The position numbers and the translations under genes are program-made. Positions 86-64,000 of a stretch of 64,000 nucleotides of DNA are shown piece by piece. Position 1 is the stretch's first letter, and each line of letters opens with the position of its first letter. Origin of the DNA: Bispira polyomma (taxonomy: Eukaryota). The notes beneath the pieces were generated by a model. That model was not told where the DNA came from. It saw only the letters and a list, made by a program, of their open reading frames with translations, and searched no databases. The stretch spans positions 62,930,001 to 62,994,000 of the forward strand of contig OZ287753.1 of assembly GCA_965649765.1 (NCBI GenBank), written 5' to 3'.

Positions 86-280
86 AAATAGAAGACAGCA
101 TTTTAGTACAAAACAATAGGAAACCAGGTTGTTTGGGGAGTGAAATGACTTTACAAAGTCGAATATTTGGATAACAGAAGTATGGATAATAGATGTTCTA
201 TTCTATGTAAATAATTACAGTTGATGTTCCAGTGACCTAATGACATAGAAGTAAAGTCTTTTTTATATGATTTCCTTCAG

Positions 281-400
281 GACACAAATGACTTTGCCCC
301 ACAGTTTGACTCTACTTCCTACACAGCCACTGATATGATAGAGACTGTAGCAGTAGGCACGCCTGTCTCCGAGGTATTTGCCAGAGATGGGGACACACAG
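281..400 (+). CDS. Cadherin exon 1 (window numbering)
   Basis: ttcag|DTNDFAPQFDSTSY...FARDGDTQ|gtatgt; the only canonical DxND linker. Confidence 0.9.
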
Positions 401-3400
401 GTATGTACACTCTTAATACAGTAAAGGCTAAAATATACAAGTTATTAGACAAGGTATGGCCATAGTGAAAGTAGTTGTCCCTACTATCGGATCATTAGGG
501 TTTAGTGTCATTCTTAAGGTTTAGCGTTATGTATTATTATTCTAAATTCAGCTGCGCCCCTTTCAGTGATTTGTAGAATCGTTCCACAGTAAACTTTCGG
601 CAGCCATTTTGAATTTTTGAGACTTTTGGAAAAACTTTTGAGGCCTAGAAAATGGAGCGAGAGATATTGTTGTCTTCTTATCCGTAAGGGTATATATTCT
701 TCGCACAAGTCAACTTCTGAAAACTTTTAGACTGGAAAGTGGCCTAACCATTATACACATAGTTTGTACCTTTTAGTTGTTTTAATATCTAACTAGGGAG
801 CCAATCGGGTGATCCGTTATAGTATCAAGGATGTGCAGCCCTCTGAGGGAGAGTCACTTTTCTACATGTCCCCAGAGTCTGGCCAGATTACAGTGAGCAG
901 ACCTCTGACTTCAGACACTAGCCAGAGATATGTGGTACGTATGTCTATACAGAGTCCAAGTATTCTTCAACCAAATTGATGGCTATTTTTTAATTGACGG
1001 TTTATGATTCCACTATCAAAATAACAGCAAGGATCAAATCTCGTCCAAAGATTGTTTAAAGAGGAAGACTTAAGAGTCAAGGTAGTATTAAACAATAGGA
1101 AAATAAAAATTTGTGAGAGTGAAAGTGTGTTCATAAAATCGATTATTTGGACAATAGAATTTTGTATAATAGAGGCATGGTATATTTATATAATACAGAG
1201 ACACAGATATGTGATTTGTGTATAAATCTAGTTCCTGTTCCAAGAATATGCTAGAGTATTGTATGTGGTATGTACCTGTATAAGAAGAGGTATGGTATAT
1301 TTATATAATACAGAGACATAGATATGTAATTTGTGTATAAATCTTGTTTCAGTTCAACTTGTAAACATTGTAAAGATTATGCTAATGTTTACCATTATGC
1401 TTAAATCAATGGTTATTTTAACACATCTTTTTTTTTGTGATCTCAACGGGTTTTCCGAGTTACCATGTATCCATCCGAGTATCTGCTACCCAAAACCTAT
1501 TTGTGGAACCGAGCACCTCACATACACATTATTTATTGTCCACTCCGCCATAAAATACGATGTTTTGAGATATGATACAGAGCGGGGTGATAAAAAGTGT
1601 TGTATCACTTGGCGCATATTGATGTCATAATGGAAGGTTTTGAATTGCAAACAAAGCGTGATCTGTGTACGTTTGTGGTAATATTTTGAGTATTTTTTGT
1701 AGTAAAGTGTGTAATGAAGTGGATAATAAAAGTAAAACACATTAAGTTATCATATGACTAAAGAATAAAAAATGAAAAGTACAATACAAGATAAAATGCA
1801 CAATACTCCTGTTCTACCAGGCTTATATTATACTGTATCTTCTTTTTTTTTTGTCATAAAATTTTTTAACATATACCACTCAGGTGGTTTTACTATGTTA
1901 TGGCCCACATAATATTATATTCATTAACGAGTTAAAATATTCTTCAATATCAAGACAGAAACATCATGTCAAATATTAAAACAATATATGTACTTGCAGA
2001 ACCTGATTATTTTATTTTTAACTATCTAAATTGGCTGCACTTTCTTTACAAATGTTTGCAAAATTTGCCCGTTACTCCAACAGCCAGGTACCCGCCCATG
2101 AGTAACAAGAACCACTCGGGTAGCAATATACCTCAAGACATTGAGAGCTCTATTTTTTATGGAGTCTTTGTGGCTTAGTGTTTTGAGTGTCTGACTTTAG
2201 ATTTCAAGGCCCAGTTCTATCCTTGCTGCTGGCCTGGAGATTGTACCCTTGGACAAGGTACTTTACACAAGTTGTCCCTCTCTACCCAGGTGTGTAAAAT
2301 GGGTACCTGGTCCCTAATGGTTTCTTAGTCTTTGTGCACCGTATGTGCCTACATCGCCGGCATGCTTTCTTATGGAGCAGAGACTGAACATTTGGTTGAC
2401 AAGTGGAAGAACCCAGGCTGGGGTGTAAATTTAAAAGTTGGCTGAGATCTCAATAGAGGTGATATCAGACTATAAACCTACACACACATTTACATATTGT
2501 GTATCCCATTGTAAGTGTACATTGGTGTCAATACACACCATGCTTTGTTTTGTTTAACAGATCACAGTAGAAGCCACAGATATGGGAGTTCCTGCAATGT
2601 CCTCCACAGCTACTGTCACTCTCAATGTTCTGAGGAACAACTTTTCCCCCGAGTTTACCCGGACAGAGTACAGTAGAAACATAGACTTTAACAGGCCAGT
2701 GGGTGAAGAGGTGGAGGTGGTGTATGCTGAGGACAAAGATAACAGGGTGGGTGATGTGTACATCTAGTGAAGTAAATACTGAAAAAGTCAGTAAATTGTA
2801 CATGTAGGCAAGTAAATACTGGGTGACATATTAGTAGTAAAACATAGATTTTAACAGGCCAGTGGGTGAAGAGGTGGAGGTGGTGTATGCTGAAGACAAA
2901 GATACCAGGGTGAGTGATGTGTACAAGTAGTCAAGTAATTACTGGGGTGACATATTAGTAGTAAAACCTTGACTTAAACAGGCTAGTGGATGAAGAGGTG
3001 GAGGTGGTATATGCTGAGGACAAAGAAACCAGGGTATTTACATATAGTCAGTTAAATATTGGGTTATATATTAGTAGTCAGTTGTGAGTACATAGAGTTA
3101 TATAAATACTAGGGAAATATATTAGCAGTAAAACATTTAGTTTAACAGGCCAGTGGGTGAGGAGGTAGAGATGTTGTATGCTGAGGACAAAGATACCAGG
3201 GTGAAAATAATACTGTATTAGTCAGTTGTGTGTACATGTAGTCAAGTAAATACTGTATTAGTCAGTTGTGTGTACATGTAGTCAAGTAAATACTTGGGTG
3301 ATATATTATGATCATGTTTGAATTAGAATATCTCAATCTGAACAATGAATGTATCAGCTATTTACTACTTTTAGAATCGTAGAACCACTCAGGCTTTGCT

Positions 3401-6400
3401 CAGTAGTAAAATGCTGGGTTTATCATGGAACATTCCTTAAATAAATATGGTCGTGTTCTAAAAGACTGGAAATATAATGGGAATAAGCTGATAAGAGTTA
3501 AAGAGTTATCAATTTAATCATGAAACACCAAAATTCAACAAAAATATTGTGCCATAACAGAACTGCAGGCTCAGAGAATGTGCAATAGTGTTCATCTTTG
3601 CGTAAAGTTTTTATTTTTGAGACCTGTGACAGTCATGCAGGGCGAATAGTTAAAAGCACACATATTGAGTAATACATATGATGGTTGGATATTTACCCCT
3701 GTTTCTGTTGGTTTATTTGTCACCCAAGATTACACAAAAGTACTAAACCAATTAATATGACAATTGGTAGAGGGATGGGGCATAGGCTGTGTTTGGTCAC
3801 TTGGCTTTAATGTTAACAAGAACATTTGTGTGTGGATCCAGGTAGAAGGATGGATCCAGAAAATGTGTTAACATTGTGGCACTGTGGAACCTTGATAAAG
3901 ACATGTGCACTCACTACTGAGTGCCATTCTAGTTAATTTTGCTCTTGTGAACTTCAAAGTTTTGATAAATATTTGAATATTTTCGGAACGACTGCAGAAT
4001 TTCCATAGACAAACACCATTTTGAATGTAGTGATATCAAATGTGAATAAGAAATTTATATCACAGATCCAGTTGTTTTGTGTAGGAAACCAATTTAATGT
4101 CTAAGACAGATAGATCGAAAGTACATGTAACAAACATTAAAAAATAAATTAAATTTCCAAACAGTTACAGCCTACCTTATGTTTATAATCTGAGCATAAC
4201 TGCTAGTCCGAACGTTTGTCGATTGTTTCTTCTTCAGTTTTCTGCTTATTTGTCTGTTACAATGTAGATGAACATGTAAAACTTTGTGTTCTTTAGGTTC
4301 CATTTAGTACAGTTACCTATGAGATTATAGGTGATGGAAAAGCCACAAGGTTCTTTAAAATTGATGAAAATGGACGAGTGACTATATACAACAACCTGGG
4401 GGAAGATGAAGACCTAGAATACTTTGTAAGTAAAAAACACCTTATAATAATTTTAATGGTTAGGGAGTTGGTCTTATGATCAGGAGGTCCCTGGTTCAAC
4501 TCCCAGTGGAGAAGTTTAGTGATCGAAAGGTCCCCAGTTTGTCTTCTGCTGCTGCCGCTAGGTTTATTGGTGGGATTACATTCTTGACCCAGGCTATATG
4601 TTGTGGGATAAATCATTGGTTGATTGATGTTGCACTTTAGATGATGCCTCACATTAATAAAGCACATTAAAACTATATAATACAACACAATATTGTAGTT
4701 AATTTGTCCAGACTCTATTGTACATTTTAGTAAAAAAGTACTATAAGTACATGCAAATGCATATTACATTTGACCTAAATAAAATCAAGGCACCAGCCGA
4801 CAATGGACCAACGGAGGGCCCACCTTGGTGAACTTACAGCACAGTCTATCCTATTTAATTAATAAATAGCAGGCATGTATTGCATAATTTATATTATTTA
4901 TAATTCCCAACTCATTACATCTATAGACTGTTCATAACTATCATAACATTTAATTATAACCTGAATAGAAACTCAGAACTACCAAAGAGTGGACCAACAA
5001 TGGCCCAACATAAGTTGAAGTTACATTTTAGACAGATGTGAGCTGGTGAACCAACGTTGGCCTAACATTAAAAAATACAGTGCGACCAACTGCTCGTTGT
5101 CATCATTGGCCTAACATAGTGATGTTATCTGGGTGATATGTTATAAACATTGTGTAAAAGAATCAACAAAAGCAGAAACACAGGTGATTAACTAAATTAA
5201 ATATGTTTAATAGTGACAAGGAGCATATTACAATCCTAATTACTAGCAGTATATTATCTACAGGTGCGTGTACGGGCCACAGACGGGGGAGACAGACAGT
5301 CTGCTGCCCTACTCACGATATCAGTCAACAGAAACCTCCATGCTCCTGTGTTCTTTCCTGGAACCTACCGAGTCACAATCTTGGATAATGAACCTTTGTC
5401 CTCATCCTTTGTTAAAGTAGAAGCTAGTGATGCTGACCTTCAGGTGACTATATTTAATATTATGTTTTTCGCTCATGGCCATTTTTTTTTGGTGTTTTGA
5501 AAGAATTTAAACATAAATTATTAATTGACAATCACTCACAGCCTTGAGGCCAATAGTGTTTTTTAATTTTTGTGTATGTCTTTAGGATGACACAAAAACT
5601 ACTGATTTACATGAAATGTGGTAGACGGATTGGACATTGTTTTCACTTTCTGAGACTGTGGCACCTTGGCAGAGGTATCCGCTCTACTGAGTGCCCTTCT
5701 AGTTTTTAACATGTTTTTAAAAAAGAAGTATTGATATGTATTGATTTCTTACTGTTTTGTCACTCAGCCCTAAATGTACTGTTGATCAAATAAAGCTAGC
5801 TACTGGTGACCAAGTGAGGAGTTTACTGTATATATACAGTCAAACTTTTATTAGACAACCACCCAAGGGAATCAGTAAAAACGGTTGTTAGTAGAGGGTC
5901 AGTCATTCTGTAAAACCTTCCTGATGTGAACAGGTTGTCACTCTACACAGTGGATGGAAATCTGGGATTATATAAAATACATCGCCCCTGTACACATCAT
6001 TGTTGTATAGTCCTTCATATTTCACTTTATATAATAGTGCTTCTAATATTAGCTTGCCTCTTGAAAGCATTTTCATCATTAACGATAGTTTGTCATAAAA
6101 CAGTTTGAAGGGAGCAGCAGTGATAAATACCAGCCAACGAAAATGCAATTCAGTAAACTCCCGAGTAATTCCCTGTACAATGAGGGGATTAATTAACATG
6201 TCTTTAATGTTTGGTAACAAATAAATTCTATTTCTCTTTTGTCCATTCATGTGCATATGTGCTATCAAGGAAAAGGGTCTTTATATTTCAGTCAGAGGTC
6301 GCTTATATTTGGTTATGTAAATTTGGTCATCACTCTCTGTATGTACTTAAGTGGTCGCATATTTACAAGTCAAATTATGGTCGCGAGAGCATACAATAGT

Positions 6401-57400: not shown

Positions 57401-60400
57401 ACAGCAGAACCTTTATTTTACGGACATCTTTCAACAGTCAGAATTTGTTTGGATAATAGAAGGTCCATAAAATAGAAGTGGCAGTTTAGTATAAAACAAT
57501 AGCAAAAAATAAGTTTGGGAGACTGAAATTGGGTTCATAATATTCAATATTCGGATACCAGAGGGTCAGATAATAGATGTTCTACTGGACTAACAGTGAG
57601 GTAAATTTGTTGAGGATGCTTATTCTTTGCCGTGTTGTTTGCAGATCTCTATATTTGCCACTGACTCCGGCTATCCTGCTAAAAATAGCTCCAACAAGGC
57701 AAGAGTCCAACTACGAGTGTTCAGGAACCGCAATGAGCCGCGGTTTTCAGCGACATCTTACACAGCAAAAGTTGAGGAAACGGTTGCCACAGGAACTGAG
57801 GTTATTGACCTGAATGCCAATGATGGAGATCCTAATGTAAGAGTTAATTAATCAGTAGATGTTCATTGTTTTCAATAGTATAGTTTATAATATACCGCAC
57901 TGCTCTTAGCTATTGTTTGTGCACAAAGAGTATCACACGGTAGATTACCTTTTTAGTGTACAATTTAATGTGTATGTGTTGCACCTATTTTTCAGTTAGT
58001 TGTTTTTTGGTTTGTTTATTGCACCCTTATTTTCAGTTGTATCATATTCAGTATTCACAAAGATGTTCAGTTTTGCAAAAACTAGAGGCTCATATATATA
58101 TATATCAAGAGACACTTTGGTTGATGATAATAATGTTTACATATTTACCAAGTCTAAAAACTATATTCTGTGAACATTTATGCTTGTTTGCAATCTTTTT
58201 GGATTTTGTGAATAATTAAAAGTATTCACTGAGAACAAATACTTGTCAAATGCTGCTGAAGCAGTCTAACATATGGGAGGATTTATTTTTCAAAATTTAA
58301 TGTATTGAATCTTTCTGTAAATAAACTTTGACAAGCGAACATGAATTTTAACTATAAAAATAGAATCCAAATTTATTTGCGGTAGGGTGTTTCTGATTTA
58401 ATTGGTCAGTCAACTCAAAATATTTGTTTGCTTTCATATTGCTCACACATATATAGATAATTGAACATCTTTGTGTAACAAGTCAAATAAAATATGTTTA
58501 CTTACTTTGTATTTTACTGGGTTTTTTTGTTTTTTTTGCTAATATTATTTTAACATGGTAAATGAAGCAATAATCAATCTGTAGTAGTTTTTCTGTAACA
58601 TACTTTTTATAGTTTTACATTTTATAATATTTTTGTTTTAAACTTTCTGTAAGTGTCTTTGTTTTAGATCTTGTTCTATTAGCTATTCATCAACATACTG
58701 GATTACCTGCAAGACATTAGTAAAAAACACTGAAGTTTACAATTTCAATGGTTTTTTCATTATTTGTGTCCTTTGACTTTTTAAAGATAAGTTATAATTT
58801 CCTAATTTGAAAGTGATTTATCCACAGTATTTGTTAACTAAGGGGTGAACGTATTATTTTTGTGCATGGCAGCATCCGTCCCCCAGGAATTGCTGTTTCT
58901 GATTATTTAAAAAAAAGTATTGCAGATATCATCACCAAAATATATATGGAGGTGTATTGGTCAGTAGCTTTCTTGGTATTGATTTTGGGTCCATTTCAAA
59001 ATACAAGATGGCCACCATCAGCAAGAAGCGTGAAAACTGTTTCTGCTCATTTAAAGAAAAACTATTATAGATATCATCACCAAATTATATATGGAGGTGT
59101 AATGGGTCAGTAGCTTGCTTGGTATTGATTTGGGGCCAGTTTAAATTAAATAAGATGGTTGACATCGGCAAAATCGTGAAAACGCTTTCTGCTCATTTAA
59201 AGAAGAACTATTGTAGATAATATCACTAAATTTTATATGTAGGTGGATTAGGTCAATAACTAACTCAGTTTCTCAGAACGAATGTCACTGTGCTGTCACG
59301 ATTACATCATGGTTATGGTCATAAAACTATTTTCACTTATTGAACCCGTCGAGTTGACCCAATTCTAGTATTGTATTGTTTTATATTGTGGATTTTAAAC
59401 ACATCATATTCATACCAGACATCTTCTAAAGTGAAACATCAGAATTGATAAAACCATAAATTATGTTCCTTCCATATATATAGCCAATTAGTCATGCATC
59501 ATCAGTAGCCAAGGGTATGTTCACATTTTGCTAAATGATGTTATCCCCTAATTACCATTATGGGTGTTATCGGGAGTTGAACTGGGGACCTTCTGATCAC
59601 CAAACTAGCTCTTTTTGTATAATAAATAATTGTTGTGTTTTTTTGCTCAAATACACTTAGTTTTATTCATTAGGTTTTATTTTGCTAATCTTCACCTTTT
59701 AGTTACACTAATGTTTCTGTATTTGTATCATATTTAATGCCCCCCACCCCACCCCACCACCACCATATTAGACCTTAAGTTGAATGAAAATAACTTTAAT
59801 ATGTGAGACATGACACAATCCATGTTAATCTTATGTATAGAATGAGCAACAAGAGAAAGACCAGGTTTGTACAGGAAGATGCCTGGAATTATATCCCTCA
59901 ATGTCTATGTTAACTGTTTATATAAACTAAGTGCTTCCTTGTATATCTCTGCTGTTTTAGTTTTATAAAGCCTTGTTATGTGTAGCGGGTTTATATATAT
60001 AATTATATATGCTTGTCATTGTATTTATTATGTAGGATAAATAGGAAAACAATTAAATAAATTTGCTACTTGCTGAATTAAGTATCATATGTCCATAGAA
60101 AATTAATAAATTCCTTGAAAAATTTTGATCTTGGAAAAGACTTTATGAATGATTACATCTATGCATGCAATTTAAGTAAGCTTACGATGCACTCAAAAAC
60201 ATTTTAATACCGGTATTTATATTTTGACATATTCTTCACCATAAAAGTACCTTTTAGAACTGATAACAATGTACCATAAACTACTTCATTATCATATATG
60301 ATGAGTTTGAAGTCACTTGCTGATGCCTGGTGGTTTACATAATCCAAATAGTATGCACTGCTTTACCCCACCAGTAAAACTTTCCCTCGTGATATGACCT

Positions 60401-63400
60401 ATACAATGTGTTGAAAGCGCTGTTAAACACCCAGTCAATCAATGCTTATTTATAAATGATAAACTGCATTTTGTAATTGCAGAAAAAAATTAAATTGACC
60501 TTTGGATAAATACATTATAGCATTAATTTAGAATGAGGTTGCTTAACGTTTATAAATTGTAACAAGGGCAATTAAAAGTAACTCAGCATATTGCTTATAT
60601 ATTTATTTTGTATTTATTTATTTATTTTGCGATAATGGGACTCATAGATTAGCAATGCTAATTGCTTTTAAAGTAGAGAATGTAGAAGTAGATTTAGTTG
60701 TACAGAGATAGCTATAATTTATATTTTATCACAGTCTTATTATTTACCAGAGTTCAAAAAACCTTGCTCTAGAAAATGCCATCAGCAGCATACATATATG
60801 TATGAAGTTCGAGAATTACAAATGTTAGCTAATTTCTATGATTTGATGTGTTTTCTCAAATGTTCATTGTTATATATAAGTTACAAGTGTTACTTCTAGT
60901 GAAGTGTAGAATTTTTTCTAAGTGTTATTTTTACTAATATAACAACCATTCATTGTAGTAGTATTGGGTAATTTAGACGAAAATTGGGCAGAGAGAATGA
61001 TGTAGGTTTTAAAATCTTATAAAGAGATATGAAAAGTGATGTACAATGTATATGGATGTCATGTACCAAGTCTGGTGTCTCCAACTCTCAGATCCTTGTT
61101 TCAGAAGCCGTTTAACACTCTGACCTATGAAATTATTGGGGATGGAACGGCTGCGAACTTCTTTGACATCAACAGTGAGGATGGCAAGATTACAGTGTCT
61201 CAAGACTTGCGGACAGAAAATGTGGAGTTTTACAATGTAACAACTTTCAATATTTCGTGTAATAGTACATACACTAATTTGTAGTGGGTAAATCGTTTGG
61301 GTTGATGTACATTGATATCAAACATAAAATTACTTCAATATCGGACGATATCGGGACATAGTAAGAAATTTGTTAAGAAACTAGGACGAATCTCAAAATA
61401 AAATACCTGCCTGAATAAAACTGGAAGTGAGAACCACTAAATATGTTTACAAATAGAAATGGTTATCAAATGGATTTTAATCATTGTTTAAAAGGTATTA
61501 AGCTTAAAATATCATTAAAATTTTAAAAAATGTTATCCCAAGGTGAAATATTTATGATATCAATGTGTTGGTATTCCAAGTCGATATCGGAACGCAAAAT
61601 ATTGCGTATATCGATAAACAATTTACCCACTACTAATTTGATATGTTTCATTGGATTGATGTTAGCAATACTTAAAATATTCAAAATGTGTTATAACTTT
61701 GATTTATTTCATTTAGTATTGCAGAGTTAATTTGCTATCTTTGATTATGTACATATTGTGTTAGACCTAAATTGCCTGGATCAAACTCTTTGGATAAAGT
61801 AGGAAACACTGAAAATTTTCTTTGATACATCAGTGCTTTATGGTAATAATCATCCTAATGCTATGCCATAAACTTTCCCTCTTTTTCTGAACATAAATAT
61901 TGTGTATGTTGTAATACTGTGTTATGGACATTTTAATACCTCCAGTAATATTTGTAGCTGAGGGTGAGAGTAAAAGATGGTGGAGTGCCAGCCAAAATGG
62001 ATATCACCATGGTGACAGTAGAAATCTTGAGGAATTTTTATGCCCCATTTTTCGATGTTGCCCAGTACAATGCGACTGTCTTAGAAACACAAGGACTTGG
62101 AGAGATGATTACAACTGTGTTAGCTAGGGACAATGATGAAAAGGTAAGAAGGCTACAAGGAGAGATTGTTACCACTGTGTTGGCCAGGGATCAAGATGAA
62201 AAGGTAAGCAGGTTACAAGGAGAGATTGTTACCACTGTGTTAGCCAGGGACAATGATGAAAAGGTAAGGAGGTTACAAGGAGAGATGGTTACAACTGTGT
62301 TAGCCAGGCACAACGATGAAAAGGTAAGGAGGTTATAAGGACTCTAAGAGATAGTTACCACTGTGTTAGCCAGGGACAGAGATGAAAAGGTAAGCAGGTT
62401 ACAAGGACTCAGAGAGATGGTTGCAACTGTGTAAGTCAGGAACAATGGTGAAAAGGTAAGCAGGTTACAAGTTCTAGACTCTGATATATATAGTTTTGCA
62501 GTGGAGAATCGCTTACATTGGCTGCCATTCAATGAAACGAGTAAGGTGATTCTTTTGTTAAATACATTTAAATGATCATTTAAATTTGGAACCTCTTTCT
62601 AGTTACTTTAAAAAATTATTAAAATGAAACAGTGTTGTTATAAAACAAGAATAGGTTTCTGTGAAGAGTTTCACATAGTTTAAATTATGAGTTATCCACA
62701 AAACAATATGTTGCAGTTCTATGTTCTAGTAATGAACTATAAAGGTAACATCAACAAAAATGTAATACATGACAGAAGTAAATATGGCTCCTGTGTTATG
62801 TATGTGGTTCCAGCTTTCACAAGTGAAATACAGTTTTATAATGCCAATATTATTGGTAGATTTAAGAAGTATAGTCAAAATAAATTTCAATGTAATGAAT
62901 TTTTTATCTTAGTTTTACATCTAGTGTTGCCCTGAAATTTATTTAGATTGCAAATTGCATTATCATCTTTTCTGTGACTGTAGTACCTTTTGGGGATTAT
63001 TTTATTAAATGTCTTGTATAATTTACAAAACCTTATGTTATCAGTTTTTAATGATAACCTATGTTTTCCAGAGTCCTTATAGAGACTTTAAGTATGCCAT
63101 TCCAACCTATGTGAACCCGAAGATATTGGAGTATTTTGGTGTAGATGACACCTCAGGGGAAGTATACCTGAAGAAGTCCATGCTTGGGGATCCCCAGAGA
63201 CAGAAAACCTGGGGAGTATGTATTATTTGAAGTTCTGTATAAAAAGCCTGGGAAGCATGTAATTTTTGGAGTTATGTATAAAACAACCTGGGGAGTATGT
63301 ATTATTTGGAGTTCTATATAGTGTGCTTGTATACCATTCAAAGAAAAGATTAGTTGGTTGTATAATTTGATCACAGTAGTTCTATAACAACTCTGCTGTA

Positions 63401-64000
63401 GAATATACAATTTTCATTTAACACAACCCTTTGTACAGCTATTGTTAAACATTTCTAAACTCATATTGGATATATACTATTAATAACCTTTCAGTAATAA
63501 CTATCATTTTCTTTGTATTTGTGAGATAATTCTAGAAGTTTCAAGCTATTTAACAGTATTAACCATGTTGCCTTGAAGTATGATGCTAGGTGTCATGTCA
63601 TACAGTAAAACCTCTGTTATCTGAACATATTGGGAAATCAAGATTTTGTTTGGATAATAGAAGGTTGAAAAATGGAAGAGGTATTTTATTACAAACAATA
63701 TGAAAATGTAAATTTGAGAGAGTGAAAAGGATTTTATAAAATCGAATACTTGGATTAGAAAACGTTTCGTTTTATAATAGAGGTCTCTACTGTATTTGTC
63801 TACACAAACAGCCGTTTCCAGTGATTGCCACTGACCAAGGCAAGCGCCCTCTAGAGAGTAGACCCCCCACCACAGTGAGAGTCCAGGTGGAGAGGAATGA
63901 CCACAGTCCACAGTTCCCACAGACCCCTTACTCACGTAGCATACAGCGAGATACACAGAGAGACACTTTCTTACTGCAGGTCTCTGCCACAGACCAGGAT
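281..64000 (+). CDS. Giant multi-exon cadherin (Fat/Dachsous-like size class, atypical EC repeats); internal part only, 47 exons, ~2,715 aa, ~25 EC repeats
   Basis: 47 segments with AG/GT boundaries splice into one frame with recurring cadherin motifs (PxF, AxDxD, YxIxGD, FxIxxxxG, AxDxGxP); gene start and end lie outside the window. Confidence 0.93.
797..934 (+). CDS. Cadherin exon 2
   Basis: ctag|GANRVIRYSI...FYMSPESGQITV...QRYV|gtacgt. Confidence 0.88.
2160..2497 (+). mobile_element. tRNA-derived SINE with CORE-like central domain (second, internally deleted copy 18958-19228)
   Basis: cccttggacaaggtacttta...ctacccaggtgtgtaaaatgggtacc resembles the CORE domain; both copies share the 3' half and an (acattt)-like tail. 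Confidence 0.65.
2561..2746 (+). CDS. Cadherin exon 3
   Basis: acag|ITVEATDMGVP...VLRNNFSPEF...AEDKDNR|gtgggt. Confidence 0.9.
2670..3210 (+). repeat. Tandem array (~4 copies) of exon 3 3' end + donor
   Basis: aacaggccagtgggtgaagaggtggaggtggtgtatgctgaggacaaagat..agg|gt repeated. Confidence 0.9.
4297..4425 (+). CDS. Cadherin exon 4
   Basis: ttag|VPFSTVTYEIIGDG...FKIDENG...LEYF|gtaagt. Confidence 0.9.
5264..5443 (+). CDS. Cadherin exon 5
   Basis: acag|VRVRATDGG...VNRNLHAPVF...ASDADLQ|gtgact. Confidence 0.9.
5537..5704 (+). mobile_element. Helentron/HINE-like element; copies ~3690-3933, 7390-7505 (+), 54122-54320 (-)
   Basis: Subterminal CCTTGGC(A/G)GAGG, 3' hairpin GC(A)CTC..GAGTGC, terminal TTCTAG in T-rich site. 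Confidence 0.55.
6999..7136 (+). CDS. Cadherin exon 6
   Basis: tcag|APHKDMKYSLIGD...ALDRERRTSYS|gtaagt. Confidence 0.9.
8256..8450 (+). CDS. Cadherin exon 7
   Basis: tcag|LEIEARDEGLP...VVRNQNSPIF...ASDADEA|gtaagt (absent from ORF track). Confidence 0.9.
9123..9254 (+). CDS. Cadherin exon 8
   Basis: tcag|VDFKTITYEIVGDD...DELYR|gtaaga. Confidence 0.9.
9982..10167 (+). CDS. Cadherin exon 9
   Basis: acag|IRVVAKDNGNP...VVRNFYVPTW...ATDRDRQ|gtatgt. Confidence 0.9.
10101..10650 (+). repeat. 80/90-bp tandem array (~7 copies) of exon 9 3' end + donor
   Basis: Units start 10101, 10191, 10271, 10351, 10431, 10511, 10601. Confidence 0.95.
10997..11137 (+). CDS. Cadherin exon 10
   Basis: ttag|GTANSEVTYEAIGDD...AKNYR|gtaagt. 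Confidence 0.88.
11206..11370 (+). mobile_element. tRNA-derived SINE, family 1 (other copies 4455-4690 +, 12130-12450 -, 15916-16250 +, 59370-59610 -)
   Basis: A box TGGCCTAGCGG, B box GGTTCGATTCC, shared body gatcagaaggtccc...attggtgggataacatccttgggcaag. Confidence 0.75.
11914..12102 (+). CDS. Cadherin exon 11
   Basis: ctag|LIIVARDNGNP...VIRNDHAPSF...ATDADPR|gtaagt. Confidence 0.9.
13258..13389 (+). CDS. Cadherin exon 12
   Basis: acag|EQFGLVQYKMIGDD...SEYR|gtgagg. Confidence 0.9.
13423..13609. mobile_element. ~190-bp Tc1/mariner-type MITE family; copies ~8565-8752, 9384-9570, 13850-14007, 14870-15000, 50250-50478, 56937-57380, 57402-57587, 63603-63792, partials near 85-205 and 1040-1175
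   Basis: TIR CAGTAGAACCTCTATTATCC...GGATAATAGAGGTTCTACTG flanked by TA. Confidence 0.8.
15154..15339 (+). CDS. Cadherin exon 13
   Basis: ctag|LRIEAYDNGSP...VDRNLNAPRF...ADDADYF|gtaagt. Confidence 0.9.
15916..16250 (+). mobile_element. tRNA-derived SINE with family-1 head and a tail resembling the 3' end of the 31161-34624 LINE
   Basis: Head as at 11206; tail catga..gcgcatttaaaacag..ttgta..tgcgc..caaatg..(tattt)n. Confidence 0.7.
16255..16545 (+). repeat. Tandem array (3 copies) of exon 14 acceptor + 5' end
   Basis: aggtatgagttgatc..gaccagcttgctcagacatactttatggt repeated. Confidence 0.85.
16479..16610 (+). CDS. Cadherin exon 14
   Basis: ccag|APYNSVRYELIQD...PQYT|gtgagt. Confidence 0.9.
17600..17770 (+). 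mobile_element. L2 3' remnant
   Basis: Translates AFSVAAPTL*NNLPANIR...LKTHIF, the L2 ORF2 C-terminal pattern. Confidence 0.7.
17874..18197 (+). CDS. Cadherin exon 15 (double-length, fused half-domain exons)
   Basis: gaag|LTIQARDLASP...VYRNLNSPRF...DADNRDPYN...EIYI|gtaagt; AAG acceptor is weak, so the start is slightly less certain. Confidence 0.85.
20116..20319 (+). CDS. Cadherin exon 16
   Basis: acag|IRIQARDGDFPP...VNRNLNAPVF...GRDDDRR|gtaggg. Confidence 0.88.
20385..20760 (-). mobile_element. L2 3' remnant; related copies at 26460-26640 and 46185-46430 (both minus)
   Basis: Minus strand WNSLPVEL...RKKLKTYL plus tail gattctgttgttgcgcttt..agatgc..aataaggcg. Confidence 0.7.
21096..21233 (+). 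CDS. Cadherin exon 17
   Basis: tcag|DPYKTVYFLLIGD...AEVYD|gtaagt. Confidence 0.9.
22058..22288. mobile_element. hAT-like MITE; second copy 38092-38291
   Basis: TIR AGTAAGGAATCT(G/A)AAATTCGCCA...TGGCGAATTTTAGATTCCTTACT; two colinear copies. Confidence 0.65.
22311..22502 (+). CDS. Cadherin exon 18
   Basis: acag|LQVRLRDGGDP...VFRNKMAPVF...ATDADTI|gtaagt. Confidence 0.9.
22708..22935 (+). mobile_element. SINE family 3 (V-domain-like); degraded copies ~6690-6905, 12820-13010, 45460-45648, 60310-60445
   Basis: tRNA-like head gtggccgaatgg; shared aggtacttgc..ggttggtg..aaacctggcc..gttaaaagtga..taaaaccca and an A/T-rich tail. Confidence 0.55.
23036..23167 (+). CDS. Cadherin exon 19
   Basis: tcag|DTFETVRYRVVGDG...IYYT|gtaaga. 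Confidence 0.9.
23330..23760 (+). repeat. ~115-bp tandem array (~4 copies) of exon 20 acceptor + 5' end
   Basis: tag|tta..agtgcaggc.tatgataatggta repeated, diverged. Confidence 0.8.
23728..23913 (+). CDS. Cadherin exon 20
   Basis: atag|LRVQAYDNGTP...VNRNLRCPNW...ATDRDIL|gtaaat. Confidence 0.9.
23930..24160. repeat. Unclassified interspersed repeat; second copy 45145-45365
   Basis: Two colinear copies (atcagg..cctgat hairpin, gattggtt.gaagcaatcgaccc, aagac.actcttgt). Confidence 0.6.
24802..24939 (+). CDS. Cadherin exon 21
   Basis: tcag|PPYNTVQYTLEGD...IEYR|gtatgt. Confidence 0.9.
25445..26265 (+). repeat. ~80-bp tandem array (~10 copies) of exon 22 acceptor + 5' end
   Basis: attcagtaacatgtgtcttgtag|ctgactgtctctg repeated; 323-bp higher-order unit. 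Confidence 0.95.
26245..26442 (+). CDS. Cadherin exon 22
   Basis: gtag|LTVSGTDLGLPEPC...VFRNEKSPLF...ATDGDQQ|gtagta. Confidence 0.88.
27137..27391. mobile_element. piggyBac-like MITE; related copy ~19515-19973 with duplicated right end
   Basis: TTAA|CCTTTT...AAAAGG|TTAA; shared tgtctgttg..gcag(t/c)tgacacccc. Confidence 0.55.
27583..27714 (+). CDS. Cadherin exon 23
   Basis: atag|EPFGRINYAVIGDD...TSYT|gtatgt. Confidence 0.9.
28555..28740 (+). CDS. Cadherin exon 24
   Basis: ccag|LKVIAVDGGTPP...VERNLNAPEF...ATDVDVN|gtaagt. Confidence 0.9.
29067..29695. mobile_element. PIF/Harbinger-like non-autonomous element, ~630 bp
   Basis: TAA TSD on both sides; TIR TGCTGTGGTCACA / TGTGACCACGGCA; full-length homologue at 49173-49819. 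Confidence 0.8.
29995..30129 (+). CDS. Cadherin exon 25
   Basis: ccag|SPHNEIRYSLL...FTVDAESG...ERYE|gtatag. Confidence 0.88.
30100..30310 (+). repeat. 69-bp tandem array (3 copies) of exon 25 3' end + donor, running into a ~60-bp intronic array (31066-31154, 34625-34885)
   Basis: tactggatgacaccagtg.aagatatgag|gt.tagtgtata repeated. Confidence 0.9.
30350..31062. mobile_element. Harbinger-like MITE with internal TCGGCCGA repeats
   Basis: TIR GCCTGCGCTTCCTTTCAGCACATT / AATGTGCTGAAAGGAAGCATAGGC; TAA/TTA flanks; the empty site matches the host repeat actgtaagctagttg. Confidence 0.75.
30575..30990. mobile_element. Fold-back (long inverted repeat) element nested in the MITE above
   Basis: ~160-bp imperfect inverted arms (gcaggagaaagc..ttttattgtgattac..gatgggtaccc and its reverse complement); AGGT...ACCT ends. 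Confidence 0.65.
31161..34624 (+). mobile_element. L2-clade (CR1 group) non-LTR retrotransposon, near intact, in the intron after exon 25
   Basis: AATATG target-site duplication (31155-31160 and 34625-34630); (TATGT)n tail; 3' stem TGCGCATTT..AAATGCGCA; endonuclease plus RT ORF. Confidence 0.93.
31452..34544 (+). pseudogene. LINE ORF2 (APE endonuclease + reverse transcriptase) interrupted by one nonsense codon
   Basis: Motifs VTETW, GDLNIH, SDH, NYRPVSNL, DLSAAFDTV, YADD, LHWLP; TAA at 34146-34148 in KKL*RVQN; ORF 34266..34544 continues in the same frame; PQG motif reads PHG. Confidence 0.9.
35432..35643 (+). CDS. Cadherin exon 26 (ends in phase 2)
   Basis: tcag|FDIQVTDLGIP...VVRNRNQPSF...ARDTDQHEPFNTL-AC|gtaagt. 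Confidence 0.88.
35596..35890 (+). repeat. 62-bp tandem array (~5 copies) of exon 26 3' end + donor
   Basis: tgaaccatttaatactctcac|gtaagtact at 35623, 35685, 35747, 35809, partial at 35871. Confidence 0.95.
36300..36557 (+). mobile_element. Degraded L2 remnant
   Basis: LVSSWLDYCNSLLFG motif and the same 3' tail as the 20385 family. Confidence 0.6.
36631..36803. mobile_element. Tc1/mariner-type MITE (second family)
   Basis: TA|CAGTCAAACCC...GGGTTTTACTG|TA. Confidence 0.65.
36841..36955 (+). CDS. Cadherin exon 27
   Basis: acag|G-YSIVGDDRAPTYF...IVYK|gtaaag; AC+G completes the Thr codon. Confidence 0.88.
37685..37870 (+). CDS. Cadherin exon 28
   Basis: caag|VRVQIEDGGVPP...VLRNLFAPEF...ATDRDEK|gtaggt. 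Confidence 0.88.
38537..39695. mobile_element. Harbinger-like MITE expanded by an internal minisatellite; short copies at 17149-17347 and 56236-56342
   Basis: TIR GGGC(T/C)GTATTCAC...GTGAATACGGGCCC; 3-bp CTG/CAG TSDs at the short copies. Confidence 0.75.
38688..39648. repeat. 34-bp minisatellite, ~28 copies
   Basis: Unit CAAAATCTTAACCTTTTCA(G/T)CCAAAATCAAG(G/T)AG. Confidence 0.95.
39887..40003 (+). CDS. Cadherin exon 29
   Basis: tcag|SPHNTIMFELDHDYFAVDSTSG...RTYR|gtatga. Confidence 0.87.
40560..40745 (+). CDS. Cadherin exon 30
   Basis: ccag|LNIYAVDQGTP...VIRNDHPPQF...ARDMDER|gtaaag. Confidence 0.88.
40675..42175 (+). repeat. 152-bp tandem array (10 copies) of exon 30 3' end + donor
   Basis: Units at 40675 + n x 152; apparently identical except the last. 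Confidence 0.97.
42830..43255. mobile_element. MITE (Harbinger-like)
   Basis: TIR GCATATTTCACAGAC...GTCTGTGAAATACGC with inner inverted copies. Confidence 0.6.
43306..43437 (+). CDS. Cadherin exon 31
   Basis: ttag|DPFNKVSYEIIGDD...RVYS|gtaagt. Confidence 0.9.
43532..44298. mobile_element. Tc1/mariner-type MITE containing a 19-22-bp minisatellite (43665-44280)
   Basis: Ends GAGTGAAACTTG...CAGGTTTGACTG; internal (TAGAGGTGGTCTCTC(A/T)CTA)n. Confidence 0.7.
44625..44998 (+). repeat. ~130-bp tandem array (3 copies) of exon 32 acceptor + 5' half
   Basis: ctagccagtgatgg.gg.tctccccctaaaacag...gaaacctccacaaacc repeated. Confidence 0.9.
44904..45089 (+). CDS. Cadherin exon 32
   Basis: atag|IRVLASDGGSPP...VDRNLHKPVF...ANDEDMR|gtatgt. 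Confidence 0.9.
45697..45828 (+). CDS. Cadherin exon 33
   Basis: gcag|EPDNTVEYELVGDD...EQYN|gtatgt. Confidence 0.9.
46562..47234 (+). CDS. Cadherin exon 34 (673 nt, ~2 EC repeats, ends in phase 1)
   Basis: tcag|VYIKATDLGD...VQRNKATPMF...VIRNLNTPRF...IAKDK-G|gtcagt; overlaps ORF 46622..47257. Confidence 0.92.
47708..47859 (+). CDS. Cadherin exon 35
   Basis: acag|GT-SPQRSDDTYVDVTVLRDQGNLQF...ISTQPS|gtaagt. Confidence 0.87.
48225..48518 (+). mobile_element. 5'-truncated L2 remnant with (TTAGA)n tail
   Basis: GPLIWNSLPDHVR...FRSKLKAYLFEQAF, then aagcgctataaaa and (ttaga)n. Confidence 0.75.
49173..49819. mobile_element. Second copy of the ~630-bp Harbinger-like element
   Basis: Colinear similarity to 29067-29695, same GTGGTCACACT TIR, TWA flanks. 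Confidence 0.78.
50099..50224 (+). CDS. Cadherin exon 36
   Basis: ttag|DRVTYEITGEG...LKTYR|gtaagc. Confidence 0.88.
51068..51256 (+). CDS. Cadherin exon 37
   Basis: acag|LSIAATRVFEV...VNRNEYAPQF...ATDRDG|gtgagt. Confidence 0.87.
52225..52347 (+). CDS. Cadherin exon 38
   Basis: ccag|DTMVYEVV...FYLNPSSGVI...VDYR|gtgaga. Confidence 0.9.
52589..52774 (+). CDS. Cadherin exon 39
   Basis: ccag|FNVLARDQSEP...VQRDLRIPSF...GRDDDKM|gtaggt. Confidence 0.88.
52670..53320 (+). repeat. 142-bp tandem array (4 copies + remnant) of exon 39 3' half + donor
   Basis: Units at 52670, 52812, 52954, 53096. Confidence 0.95.
53430..53897 (+). repeat. 65-72-bp tandem array (~7 copies) of exon 40 acceptor + 5' end
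   Basis: cctacactttcag|gg.gag..gaggtacggtgt..caggacttgtaccag repeated. Confidence 0.95.
53861..53983 (+). CDS. Cadherin exon 40
   Basis: tcag|GELRYGVSG...FGVRADTGEV...SQYV|gtaagt. Confidence 0.87.
55116..55298 (+). CDS. Cadherin exon 41
   Basis: gtag|LTVFVYDDANP...MNRNEKTPRF...ATDEDG|gtaggt. Confidence 0.88.
56467..56598 (+). CDS. Cadherin exon 42
   Basis: ctag|DSVTYGISV...YFYVIPTRGQL...NNFR|gtaaca. Confidence 0.85.
57061..57316 (+). mobile_element. 5'-truncated L2 remnant nested in a MITE
   Basis: SLPSSLR...FSKKLKTHLYQLAF* plus acattaacatt tail, splitting MITE 56937-57380. Confidence 0.7.
57645..57836 (+). CDS. Cadherin exon 43
   Basis: gcag|ISIFATDSGYP...VFRNRNEPRF...ANDGDPN|gtaaga. 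Confidence 0.9.
61105..61236 (+). CDS. Cadherin exon 44
   Basis: tcag|KPFNTLTYEIIGDG...EFYN|gtaaca; CAG-AAG tandem acceptor. Confidence 0.9.
61282..61632. mobile_element. hAT-type MITE
   Basis: Perfect 8-bp TSD CTAATTTG (61274-61281 and 61633-61640); TIR TAGTGGGTAAAT(C/T)GTTT. Confidence 0.85.
61958..62143 (+). CDS. Cadherin exon 45
   Basis: gtag|LRVRVKDGGVP...ILRNFYAPFF...ARDNDEK|gtaaga. Confidence 0.9.
62098..62470 (+). repeat. 60/66-bp tandem array (6 copies) of exon 45 3' end + donor
   Basis: agagat.gttac.actgtgttagccagggac...gatgaaaag|gtaag repeated. Confidence 0.95.
63072..63215 (+). CDS. Cadherin exon 46
   Basis: ccag|SPYRDFKYAI...FGVDDTSGEV...KTWG|gtatgt. Confidence 0.88.
63812..64000 (+). 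CDS. Cadherin exon 47 (runs off window)
   Basis: acag|PFPVIATDQG...VERNDHSPQF...SATDQD. Confidence 0.85.

What the first reader, a model, noticed from the sequence alone, without database searches (positions are those of the whole stretch)
281..64000. Cadherin with a systematically rewired linker: x-R-N replaces D-x-N-D in 25 consecutive repeats
Seen: exon 1 has canonical DTNDFAPQF. All 25 following linkers are V/I/M-x-R-N(D)-x-x-x-P-x-F/W (LRNNFSP, NRNLHAP, VRNQNSP ... ERNDHSP; one lacks the Pro), one residue shorter than V-x-D-x-N-D-N-x-P. DRE survives in only two repeats (exons 6, 34). DxD and AxD are kept, and a GD(D) motif after strand C is strongly conserved. Established: classical EC linkers bind three Ca2+ via xE, DRE, DxNDN, DxD and AxD. 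Inference: sites 1 and 2 are lost and the invariant Arg may substitute for Ca2+ by salt-bridging, perhaps to the GD(D) acids, leaving about one Ca2+ per linker. That would be a distinct rod-like cadherin subfamily likely mislabelled Fat4-like by automated annotation.
Basis: partly seen in the sequence, partly recalled or inferred. Interest (0 to 1): 0.75.

Follow-up and report, generated by a model that had tools for sequence, protein, structure and literature searches.

The report
Giant cadherin with arginine-rewired linkers
This is part of a giant cell-surface cadherin gene in which almost every joint between domains carries an arginine in place of two of the usual calcium-binding acids, a design shared by an undescribed protein family in molluscs, a brachiopod and a ribbon worm.

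Summary
The window carries one canonical linker (DTNDFAPQF, 281-307). After it come 25 of 25 linkers of the form x-R-[N/D]-x3-P-x-F, one of them without Pro. These linkers are one residue shorter than DxNDNxP. Arg is written with four different codons, and the repeats are only about 32% identical.

I count 75 such linkers in a row, 74 with Arg, over about 176 kb. Upstream lie canonical repeats. Downstream lie one canonical linker, a membrane helix and a short tail.

The same design marks a family in gastropods, bivalves, Lingula and Tubulanus. Automatic annotation calls these proteins Fat1/3/4-like or cadherin-23-like, but they lack EGF and laminin-G domains.

The ligands of Ca2+ site 3 are almost invariant (N, DxD, AxD). 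Both linker Asp and the first DRE Asp are gone. The xEx Glu and an Asp at the third DRE position persist, and these two acids track the Arg more strongly than GD(D) does.

My reading is one Ca2+ per linker plus an Arg-carboxylate clamp. This is inferred, not shown. Four literature searches found no description of it.

The parts
236..64000 (+). Window portion of one giant cadherin gene. There are about 47 short exons. Most EC repeats are split over two exons and one exon holds two whole repeats. The gene runs off both ends of the window.
   Evidence: Open frames and translations. Own EC profile matches in gene order. Pfam Cadherin. AG/GT sites beside the frames. No RNA support was available.
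281..307 (+). Last canonical linker of the N-terminal part: DTNDFAPQF.
   Evidence: Further canonical-type repeats lie upstream, for example VLDVNDNDPVF in L003.
2630..2656 (+). RN linker 1: LRNNFSPEF
5327..5353 (+). RN linker 2: NRNLHAPVF
8334..8360 (+). RN linker 3: VRNQNSPIF
10051..10077 (+). RN linker 4: VRNFYVPTW
11986..12012 (+). RN linker 5: IRNDHAPSF
15223..15249 (+). RN linker 6: DRNLNAPRF
17949..17975 (+). RN linker 7: YRNLNSPRF, in an exon that holds a whole EC repeat.
20185..20211 (+). RN linker 8: NRNLNAPVF
22386..22412 (+). RN linker 9: FRNKMAPVF
23797..23823 (+). RN linker 10: NRNLRCPNW
26323..26349 (+). RN linker 11: FRNEKSPLF
28624..28650 (+). RN linker 12: ERNLNAPEF
35507..35533 (+). 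RN linker 13: VRNRNQPSF
37754..37780 (+). RN linker 14: LRNLFAPEF
40629..40655 (+). RN linker 15: IRNDHPPQF
44973..44999 (+). RN linker 16: DRNLHKPVF
46562..47234 (+). Single long exon: the end of one EC repeat, one whole repeat and most of the next, and two RN linkers (QRNKATPMF at 46637-46663, IRNLNTPRF at 46961-46987). It also holds one of the two surviving DRE motifs. I used it as the unjoined query for all searches.
   Evidence: Acceptor ...tcgtcag| and donor G|gtcag read. Pfam E 5.7e-27..
47752..47778 (+). RD linker 19, without Pro: LRDQGNLQF
51140..51166 (+). RN linker 20: NRNEYAPQF
52658..52684 (+). RD linker 21: QRDLRIPSF
55185..55211 (+). RN linker 22: NRNEKTPRF
57720..57746 (+). RN linker 23: FRNRNEPRF
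62027..62053 (+). RN linker 24: LRNFYAPFF
63890..63916 (+). RN linker 25: ERNDHSPQF
7005..7151 (+). Second-half exon of an EC repeat that keeps a full DRE (…LDRERRTSY…), one of two in the window.

Best explanation
What it is. The window is the middle of one very large single-pass cadherin gene, about 232 kb long and running from about C6:62,893,000 to 63,124,900. In order it has:
- several N-terminal EC repeats with canonical linkers;
- 75 consecutive repeats joined by a rewired linker;
- one canonical linker next to the membrane;
- a transmembrane helix;
- a short cytoplasmic tail with an NPxY motif and a C-terminal T-x-L ending.

Family. It belongs to a family not described in the literature I could search. 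I found members in gastropods, bivalves, a brachiopod and a nemertean. Automatic annotation calls them Fat-like.

How the joint most likely works (inferred).
1. The Ca2+ site nearest the next domain (site 3) is kept. Its ligands are the linker Asn, DxD and AxD.
2. The two other sites are replaced by the guanidinium of the invariant Arg.
3. The Arg sits in a linker one residue shorter and pairs with the two carboxylates that normally bridge Ca1 and Ca2. These are the Glu of xEx and the acid at the third DRE position, here Asp.
4. Each joint would then need one Ca2+ instead of three, while still being held by a charge cluster.

Shown: the sequence pattern, its conservation, its co-variation and its taxonomic spread. 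Inferred: the Ca2+ count, the Arg contacts and any effect on stiffness.
For: Pattern and extent.
- 25 of 25 linkers in the window fit the pattern. I count 50 more downstream, 49 with Arg (by eye).
- Among aligned pieces of the gene, Arg is 63 of 64, and the next residue is Asn 49 and Asp 11 of 63.

Site-3 ligands.
- In this gene D29 is 69 of 71, D31 is 68 of 70 and D83 is 68 of 68.
- In 45 family proteins, after 790 R-linkers followed by a parsed repeat, D29 is 98%, D31 97% and D83 98%. In canonical cadherins the figures are 90, 90 and 87%.

Lost ligands. The first DRE Asp is 4 of 74 here and 4% in the family, against 93% in canonical cadherins. The linker lacks both Asp.

Kept acids. The xEx Glu is 53 of 70. 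Asp at the third DRE position is 45 of 74.

Co-variation within the family. I compared repeats followed by an R-linker (918) with repeats followed by a linker that has no basic residue (186).
- Acid at the xEx column: 80 vs 53%, odds ratio 3.5.
- Acid at the third DRE column: 60 vs 25%, odds ratio 4.6.
- Most of the 38 columns tested, and all the core fold columns, have odds ratios of 0.3-1.8. Five others lie at 2.0-2.6: Gly44, Ala48 and the aromatic columns F52 and Y75.

Conservative replacement. Lys replaces Arg in 32 family linkers.

Precedent. In PCDH15 EC5-6 the XEX, DRE and DXNDN motifs are altered while DXD and XDX are kept, and crystals show one Ca2+ at site 3 (PMC7547225, passages).

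Family and architecture.. The tail and its conservation. The membrane helix was read by eye.
Against: - No structure, no coordinates and no binding data. The AlphaFold model was mediocre (mean pLDDT 71.8, pTM 0.48), and its matches to solved two-domain cadherins had TM below 0.5, so it says nothing on the joint.
- The xEx Glu and the third-position Asp are absent from about a quarter and about 40% of repeats respectively, yet the Arg is still there. So the pairing cannot be obligatory.
- The co-variation test counts repeats that are related by duplication. Its p-values overstate independence.
- In the known one-Ca2+ and Ca2+-free linkers the joint is flexible (PCDH15 EC5-6; LI-cadherin EC2-3). 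A clamp that restores stiffness is a hypothesis.
- The gene model rests on open frames and splice consensus only. No RNA run was listed.
- That all 75 repeats belong to one transcript is inferred from orthologue models of up to 7,916 residues with the same layout.
Confidence: 0.55

Rival explanations
1. Sites 1 and 2 are lost and the Arg salt-bridges to the GD(D) acids that follow strand C at the base of the preceding domain.
For: - GD(D) is enriched in this family. Gly is 65% against 14% in canonical cadherins and 54 of 71 in this gene.
- Gly44 goes with the R-linker at odds ratio 2.4.
- From recalled cadherin topology, the loop after strand C lies at the same end of the domain as the linker.
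Against: - The acid after the Gly is present in only 40% of family repeats before an R-linker. It is weakly associated with the Arg (odds ratio 1.6), and the second acid is not associated (p 0.26).
- The xEx and third-DRE acids are more frequent and more strongly associated.
Confidence: 0.15
2. These are plain partial-calcium linkers like PCDH15 EC5-6, with one Ca2+ and a flexible joint. The Arg would be conserved for another reason, such as packing against the next domain, binding an anionic partner (sulfated glycan, or mineral or matrix anions), or cis or trans contacts. The molecule would be a flexible chain, not a rod.
For: - The pattern of kept and lost motifs is the same as in PCDH15 EC5-6, which takes three different orientations in crystals.
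- Ca2+-free linkers are flexible in LI-cadherin.
- Cadherin domains are the most abundant domains in the Lingula shell matrix (PMC4595640, one passage). A protein named 'protocadherin fat 4' is reported in chiton shell and spicules (PMC13564323, passages).
Against: - PCDH15 EC5-6 has no conserved basic residue.
- Here Arg is nearly invariant over hundreds of diverged repeats, is replaced by Lys when replaced conservatively, and co-varies with two buried-site acids. That fits an intramolecular charge partner better than an external ligand.
Confidence: 0.2
3. The linkers still bind two or three Ca2+ through a re-arranged ligand set (xEx Glu, third-position Asp, GD(D), and Asn/Asp of the linker). 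The Arg would be peripheral.
For: Several acidic residues remain near the joint. PCDH15 EC2-3 can hold two or three Ca2+ depending on context, despite altered motifs.
Against: - Both linker Asp and the first DRE Asp are gone.
- A conserved cation (Arg or Lys) in the middle of the site should disfavour more Ca2+.
- The shorter linker changes the geometry.
Confidence: 0.1

Closest known systems
FAT atypical cadherins (Fat1-4, Drosophila ft and kugelei): the label that automatic annotation gives this family
   Same: Very long single-pass cadherins with many tandem EC repeats. They are the best-scoring named relatives outside the family in sequence searches.
   Different: - True Fat proteins in the same hit list carry EGF (PF00008) and laminin-G (PF02210, PF00054) domains and 19-29 canonical linkers. 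Family members carry neither domain and 0-6 canonical linkers.
- No EGF or laminin-G match in two homologues or in this gene's membrane-proximal frames.
- At least 75 rewired repeats instead of about 34 repeats.
- A tail of about 100 residues with different motifs.
Protocadherin-15 EC5-6 partial calcium-free linker
   Same: The XEX, DRE and DXNDN motifs are altered while DXD and XDX of the next repeat are kept. Crystals show one Ca2+ at site 3 (PMC7547225, passages).
   Different: That is a single linker in an otherwise mostly canonical protein, with no conserved basic residue (PPNNQ), and it is flexible. Here the change is systematic over 75 linkers, has an invariant Arg, is one residue shorter, and keeps two of the site-1/2 acids.
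Calcium-free linkers of LI-cadherin EC2-3, PCDH15 EC9-10 and DN-cadherin
   Same: They are natural departures from the three-Ca2+ joint.
   Different: Those lose all Ca2+ ligands and bend or flex at one place. Here the site-3 ligands are more conserved than in canonical cadherins.
Cadherin-23
   Same: A long chain of EC repeats, a single pass and a short C-terminal S/T-x-L type ending. Some family members are auto-named cadherin-23-like. The CDH23 ending itself is recalled, not from a call.
   Different: Solved CDH23 fragments align with a gap at the Arg position, that is they have canonical-length linkers. Repeat number and tail motifs differ.

Membership tests
Cadherin superfamily | Tandem extracellular cadherin (EC) repeats that match PF00028 | tested here: met
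   The long exon scores E 5.7e-27 and the 17793-18263 exon E 3e-11. Several half-repeat exons give sub-threshold partial hits. Solved cadherins match at E down to 1.9e-50.
Cadherin superfamily | EC fold | tested here: met
   The AlphaFold model of the long exon is made almost wholly of beta strands (two 4-residue helices; mean pLDDT 71.8). All listed Foldseek matches are cadherin EC fragments at probability 1.00.
Cadherin superfamily | Canonical three-Ca2+ linker motifs (XEX, DRE, DXNDN, DXD, XDX) | tested here: not met
   DXNDN and the first DRE Asp are absent in 75 consecutive linkers. DXD, XDX and partly XEX are present. This is a motif of typical members, not a condition of membership.
FAT atypical cadherins | EGF-like and laminin-G domains between the EC repeats and the membrane | tested here: not met
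   - None in P0005 or P0016.
- None in the precomputed Pfam lists of family members, while true Fat proteins in the same table have them.
- None in 9 membrane-proximal, membrane-helix and tail frames of this gene.
FAT atypical cadherins | About 32-34 EC repeats with mostly canonical linkers | tested here: not met
   75 rewired linkers plus N-terminal canonical repeats. Family proteins have 0-6 canonical against 13-49 RN linkers.
FAT atypical cadherins | Long cytoplasmic domain of the Fat type | tested here: not met
   In orthologues the membrane helix lies about 100 residues before the C-terminus. The tail motifs (EPPSFL, YVPPDE, NPxY, TT[MI]L) match no Pfam family.
Partial calcium-free (site-3-only) cadherin linker, as in PCDH15 EC5-6 | XEX, DRE and DXNDN altered while DXD and XDX of the next repeat are intact | tested here: met
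   The definition is from PMC7547225.
Partial calcium-free (site-3-only) cadherin linker, as in PCDH15 EC5-6 | Exactly one bound Ca2+, at site 3 | not testable with these tools
   This needs a structure or a binding measurement.
RN-linker giant cadherins (family proposed here) | A long uninterrupted run of R-[N/D]-x3-P-x-F linkers, one residue shorter than canonical | tested here: met
   The same holds in 45 public proteins.
RN-linker giant cadherins (family proposed here) | Canonical linkers at the N-terminus and one canonical linker about 390 residues before the C-terminus | tested here: met
   In this gene: VLDVNDNDPVF in L003 and DTNDFAPQF in the window, and DKNDNPPVF at L016 7597-7788. 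In orthologues.
RN-linker giant cadherins (family proposed here) | A conserved tail: EPPSFL-[RK]EYETQSL-MYVPPDE…LGE[IV]N…NPxY, ending in T-x-L | tested here: met
   Tail exons L017 6789-7025 and 7606-7875 match the C-termini of mollusc, Lingula and Tubulanus proteins. The candidate last exon ends …PENMTIL at L018 872.

The most novel reading that the evidence does not exclude
An Arg-carboxylate clamp has replaced two of the three calcium ions at every joint of a cadherin chain of about 85 domains. At about 4.5 nm per repeat (a recalled figure) that chain would be roughly 0.35-0.4 µm long. Its stiffness would then depend on one Ca2+ per joint, or on little Ca2+ at all.

The family would be a spiralian invention for a very long apical link or matrix-anchoring filament, possibly in shell-forming epithelium. 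It would be coupled inside the cell through NPxY and a PDZ-type ending. If so, it would be a natural design in which an amino-acid side chain stands in for structural calcium in a cadherin.
Probability: 0.25. Interest if true: 0.8.

Novelty: new variant of a known kind. Interest (0 to 1): 0.66.

Why it matters
Cadherin mechanics are explained by three Ca2+ ions that stiffen each joint. The known exceptions are single odd linkers that make local hinges.

Here evolution has changed the joint itself and then kept the new design, in 75 consecutive linkers of this gene (74 with Arg) and 862 linkers in 45 family proteins from three phyla. That gives structural biologists a ready-made test of two questions. 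Can a side-chain cation replace structural Ca2+? What does the remaining site 3 contribute on its own?

It also matters for annotation. A whole family in molluscs, brachiopods and nemerteans is being filed as Fat or cadherin-23. This can mislead studies of planar polarity, shell matrix and settlement that quote those names.

Tried and rejected
- Structure. One AlphaFold job ran on the long exon with five paralogous single-exon stretches as its alignment (A1). Mean pLDDT was 71.8 and pTM 0.48. Foldseek against the PDB returned only cadherins, at TM 0.41-0.49 and rmsd 8-11 Å. The inter-domain geometry is therefore not trustworthy, and the tool returns no coordinates. The Arg contacts could not be read.
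- Expression. The look-up of sequencing runs listed three runs of one study, none on record as RNA, each holding about 0.9 of the words, introns included. Read laying could not have answered expression or splicing, so I did not call it.
- Wider taxon search by the tail. The Saccostrea tail found only molluscs. The Lingula tail found only Lingula. The word-based search is too insensitive for such short, diverged tails, so absence from annelids or other phyla is not shown.
- Paralogues in this genome. The search with the 664-aa exon found only the gene itself plus canonical single-exon cadherins. Small-exon paralogues could have been missed.
- Last exon. A first pattern scan printed nothing. A looser scan gave the candidate ending at L018 872.
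- One search was a script of mine with a wrong pattern. It was corrected.
- (automatic AG/GT picking) is crude. Several boundaries it printed are internal AG or GT sites. I use it only to show that consensus sites flank the frames.
- Species. I did not determine it. The nearest named relatives of the protein are molluscan. Two earlier notes of this scan call the animal a marine worm, or worm-like (unchecked).
- Literature. The four searches were: 'cadherin' + 'calcium-free linker'; 'cadherin', 'DXNDN', 'mollusc'; 'cadherin superfamily', 'Lophotrochozoa', 'extracellular cadherin'; 'protocadherin Fat 4', 'shell', 'mantle'. None described this linker. Subscription journals and supplements were not searched. 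Supplementary tables of the shell-proteome and oyster-atlas papers might identify the exact proteins.

Full report
**What is in the window.** The + strand carries a long series of short open frames whose translations are halves of cadherin EC repeats.
- Pfam's Cadherin model matches them, best on a single long exon (E 5.7e-27).
- Most repeats are split over two exons. One exon type holds strands F-G of repeat n, the linker and the first third of repeat n+1. The other type holds the rest.
- The frames are flanked by AG and GT sites. At most boundaries the frame ends in Q (CAG) and restarts at V (GTx), so the introns look like phase 0. One boundary read base by base, the donor of the long exon, is phase 1.
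- A LINE-type element (reverse transcriptase plus endonuclease) sits in an intron at 31443-34541.
Every search used one exon or one public protein.

**The observation.** The first linker in the window is canonical (DTNDFAPQF, 281-307). One search then finds 25 of 25 linkers of the form x-R-[N/D]-x-x-x-P-x-[F/W]: 23 RN, 2 RD, and one without Pro.
- Arg is written with four codons (AGG 14, AGA 8, CGT 2, CGA 1).
- The flanking 62 residues are on average 32% identical, measured on the 16 of 25 that had enough open frame on both sides. The invariance is therefore selection, not recent copying.
- The linker is one residue shorter than the canonical one. From the last strand-G hydrophobic residue to the Pro the mode is 7 residues (723 of 870 RN linkers), against 8 (3700 of 4277 canonical). 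HMMER puts a one-residue gap just before the Arg when aligning to solved cadherins.
- Five other cadherin open frames of the same genome have 37 canonical linkers and no true RN linker.

**The gene is much larger than the window.** The window is C6:62,930,001-62,994,000.
- Upstream exons from about 62,893,200 encode repeats with canonical features, for example VLDVNDNDPVF and LDRE.
- Downstream the same two-exon repeats continue to about 63,108,900. By my count from the translations there are 50 more non-canonical linkers. Of these, 49 have Arg and 46 have R-[N/D].
- That makes 75 in a row, 74 of them with Arg.
- Then follow a canonical DKNDNPPVF linker, divergent membrane-proximal frames and a hydrophobic helix, read by eye (L017 3623-3901). 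After these come tail exons and a candidate last exon ending …PENMTIL.
- Nine of these membrane-proximal, membrane-helix and tail frames gave no EGF or laminin-G match.

**Relatives.** A full HMMER scan of 1.84 billion representatives with the long exon gave 7,271 proteins at E ≤ 0.001.
- Among the best 150, fifteen carry 2-30 RN linkers with at most five (in fourteen of them at most one) canonical linker. The remaining 135 are canonical or have neither motif, with up to 12 scattered RN-pattern matches.
- The named RN proteins are from Haliotis, Patella, Potamilus, Bulinus, Candidula, Lingula anatina and Tubulanus polymorphus.
- A second search, with the Haliotis protein, listed 29 further mollusc proteins with 9-49 RN linkers and 0-6 canonical ones. 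After these the scores step down to canonical Fat- and cadherin-23-type proteins.
- Their source names are 'protocadherin Fat 1/3/4(-like)', 'cadherin-23-like' or 'hypothetical'.
- True Fat proteins in the same table carry EGF and laminin-G domains. The RN proteins do not.

**A second family mark.** The tail exons of this gene match the C-termini of RN proteins from oysters, gastropods, a freshwater mussel, Lingula and Tubulanus.
- The aligned tails share a juxtamembrane W-W segment, the membrane helix, EPPSFL-[RK]EYETQSL-MYVPPDE…LGE[IV]N, an NPxY motif and an ending E[GS]TT[MI]L or RTEL.
- Orthologues found by the tail have the same layout. The two that reach their N-terminal part (P0267 and P0037) begin with five canonical linkers; one lone canonical linker lies about 390 residues before the end. 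They reach 7,076 and 7,916 residues as partial models.
- This supports one very large gene here. No RNA run was available to prove it.

**Which calcium ligands are left.** I built an EC profile from the single-exon repeats and aligned all repeats to it.

| Position | This gene |
|---|---|
| Linker Arg | 63 of 64 |
| Residue after Arg | Asn 49, Asp 11 of 63 |
| DxD | 69 of 71 and 68 of 70 |
| Asp of AxD | 68 of 68 |
| xEx Glu | 53 of 70 |
| First DRE Asp | 4 of 74 |
| Third DRE position | Asp 45, Glu 4 of 74 |
| Gly of GD(D) | 54 of 71 |
| Residue after that Gly | Asp 37 of 72 |

- In 45 family proteins, after 790 R-linkers followed by a parsed repeat, the next repeat has DxD at 98 and 97% and the AxD Asp at 98%. 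In canonical cadherins the figures are 90, 90 and 87%.
- By the standard assignment of ligands, the kept residues are those of site 3. I recall that assignment, and the passages of PMC7547225 read agree with it.
- The lost residues serve sites 1 and 2. The exception is the two carboxylates that normally bridge those two ions.

**Co-variation.** Within family proteins I compared repeats followed by an R-linker (918) with repeats followed by a linker that has no basic residue (186).
- Most of the 38 columns tested, and all the core fold columns, have odds ratios of 0.3-1.8.
- The two strongest associations are an acid at the xEx column (80 vs 53%, odds ratio 3.5) and an acid at the third DRE column (60 vs 25%, odds ratio 4.6).
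- Gly44, Ala48 and the aromatic columns F52 and Y75 follow, at 2.0-2.6.
- In the earlier grouping, the acid after the Gly reached only 1.6 and the second acid was not associated.
- Lys stands in for Arg in 32 linkers.
- The repeats are related by duplication, so these figures are indications, not probabilities.

**Mechanism proposed.** One Ca2+ remains per joint, at site 3. The Arg, in a linker one residue shorter, takes the place of the two other ions and pairs with the xEx Glu and the third-position Asp.
- The nearest solved case is PCDH15 EC5-6. It has the same kept and lost motifs, one Ca2+ at site 3 and several orientations in crystals, but no basic residue.
- Fully Ca2+-free linkers are flexible too.
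- Whether the Arg clamp restores stiffness is open.

**Possible biology (leads only).**
- Cadherin is among the most abundant domains in the Lingula shell matrix (one passage).
- A protein named 'protocadherin fat 4' is reported in chiton shell plates and spicules (passages).
- An oyster single-nucleus atlas preprint lists 'protocadherin Fat 4 isoform X3' among shell-matrix genes of a mantle cell type (one passage). The C. gigas tail orthologue P0262 carries that same source name. This is a match of names, not of sequences.

**Novelty.** Four full-text searches found no description of this linker or family. A word search of this scan's earlier notes found none that held all three words. I class it as a new variant of a known kind. 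It is a cadherin, but with a systematically different joint and its own architecture and tail.

Noticed in passing
window 40829-41961; also 10200-10700, 26782-26916, 44585-44845, 52794-53218 and 62098-62470; L007 4225-4643; L010 3432-3830; L012 8024-8131: Introns just after or before many first-half exons hold tandem arrays of partial copies of the neighbouring exon end. One example is eight copies of a 23-residue piece at 152-bp spacing after exon 30. Another is three copies at 142 bp after exon 39. The copies are open and close to the exon. Whether any is spliced in is unknown.
   Followed up: partly
window 31443-34541: A LINE-type retrotransposon lies in an intron. One 901-residue open frame has endonuclease and reverse-transcriptase domains, and a second open frame of 131 residues follows. 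It is on the same strand as the gene.
   Followed up: partly
L008-L014 (C6:63,024,001-63,094,000): In the C-terminal half the repeats alternate between two kinds. One has G-x-Y-P-A-x-x-F-F after strand C. The other has GDD or GxE. RD and RN linkers often alternate as well. This suggests a two-repeat super-unit. MAFFT shifted two of six stretches by one repeat for this reason.
   Followed up: no
L014 770-2761 (C6:63,084,770-63,086,761): One exon of 664 residues encodes five whole EC repeats, most of a sixth and six RN/RD linkers, in a gene that otherwise splits each repeat in two. It looks as if introns were lost from a stretch of the gene.
   Followed up: no
L017 3623-3901, 6789-7025 and 7606-7875; L018 ending at 872: The tail has an NPxY motif and a T-x-L ending of the PDZ-ligand type. 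Both are conserved from molluscs to Lingula. No Pfam family matches the tail.
   Followed up: partly
G000 contig C1, for example 16.78, 52.1-52.3, 57.2-57.6 and 61.5-62.2 Mb; C4 82.84 Mb: There are many single-exon cadherin open frames of about 700-1800 residues with canonical linkers. They look like clustered protocadherin-type genes.
   Followed up: partly
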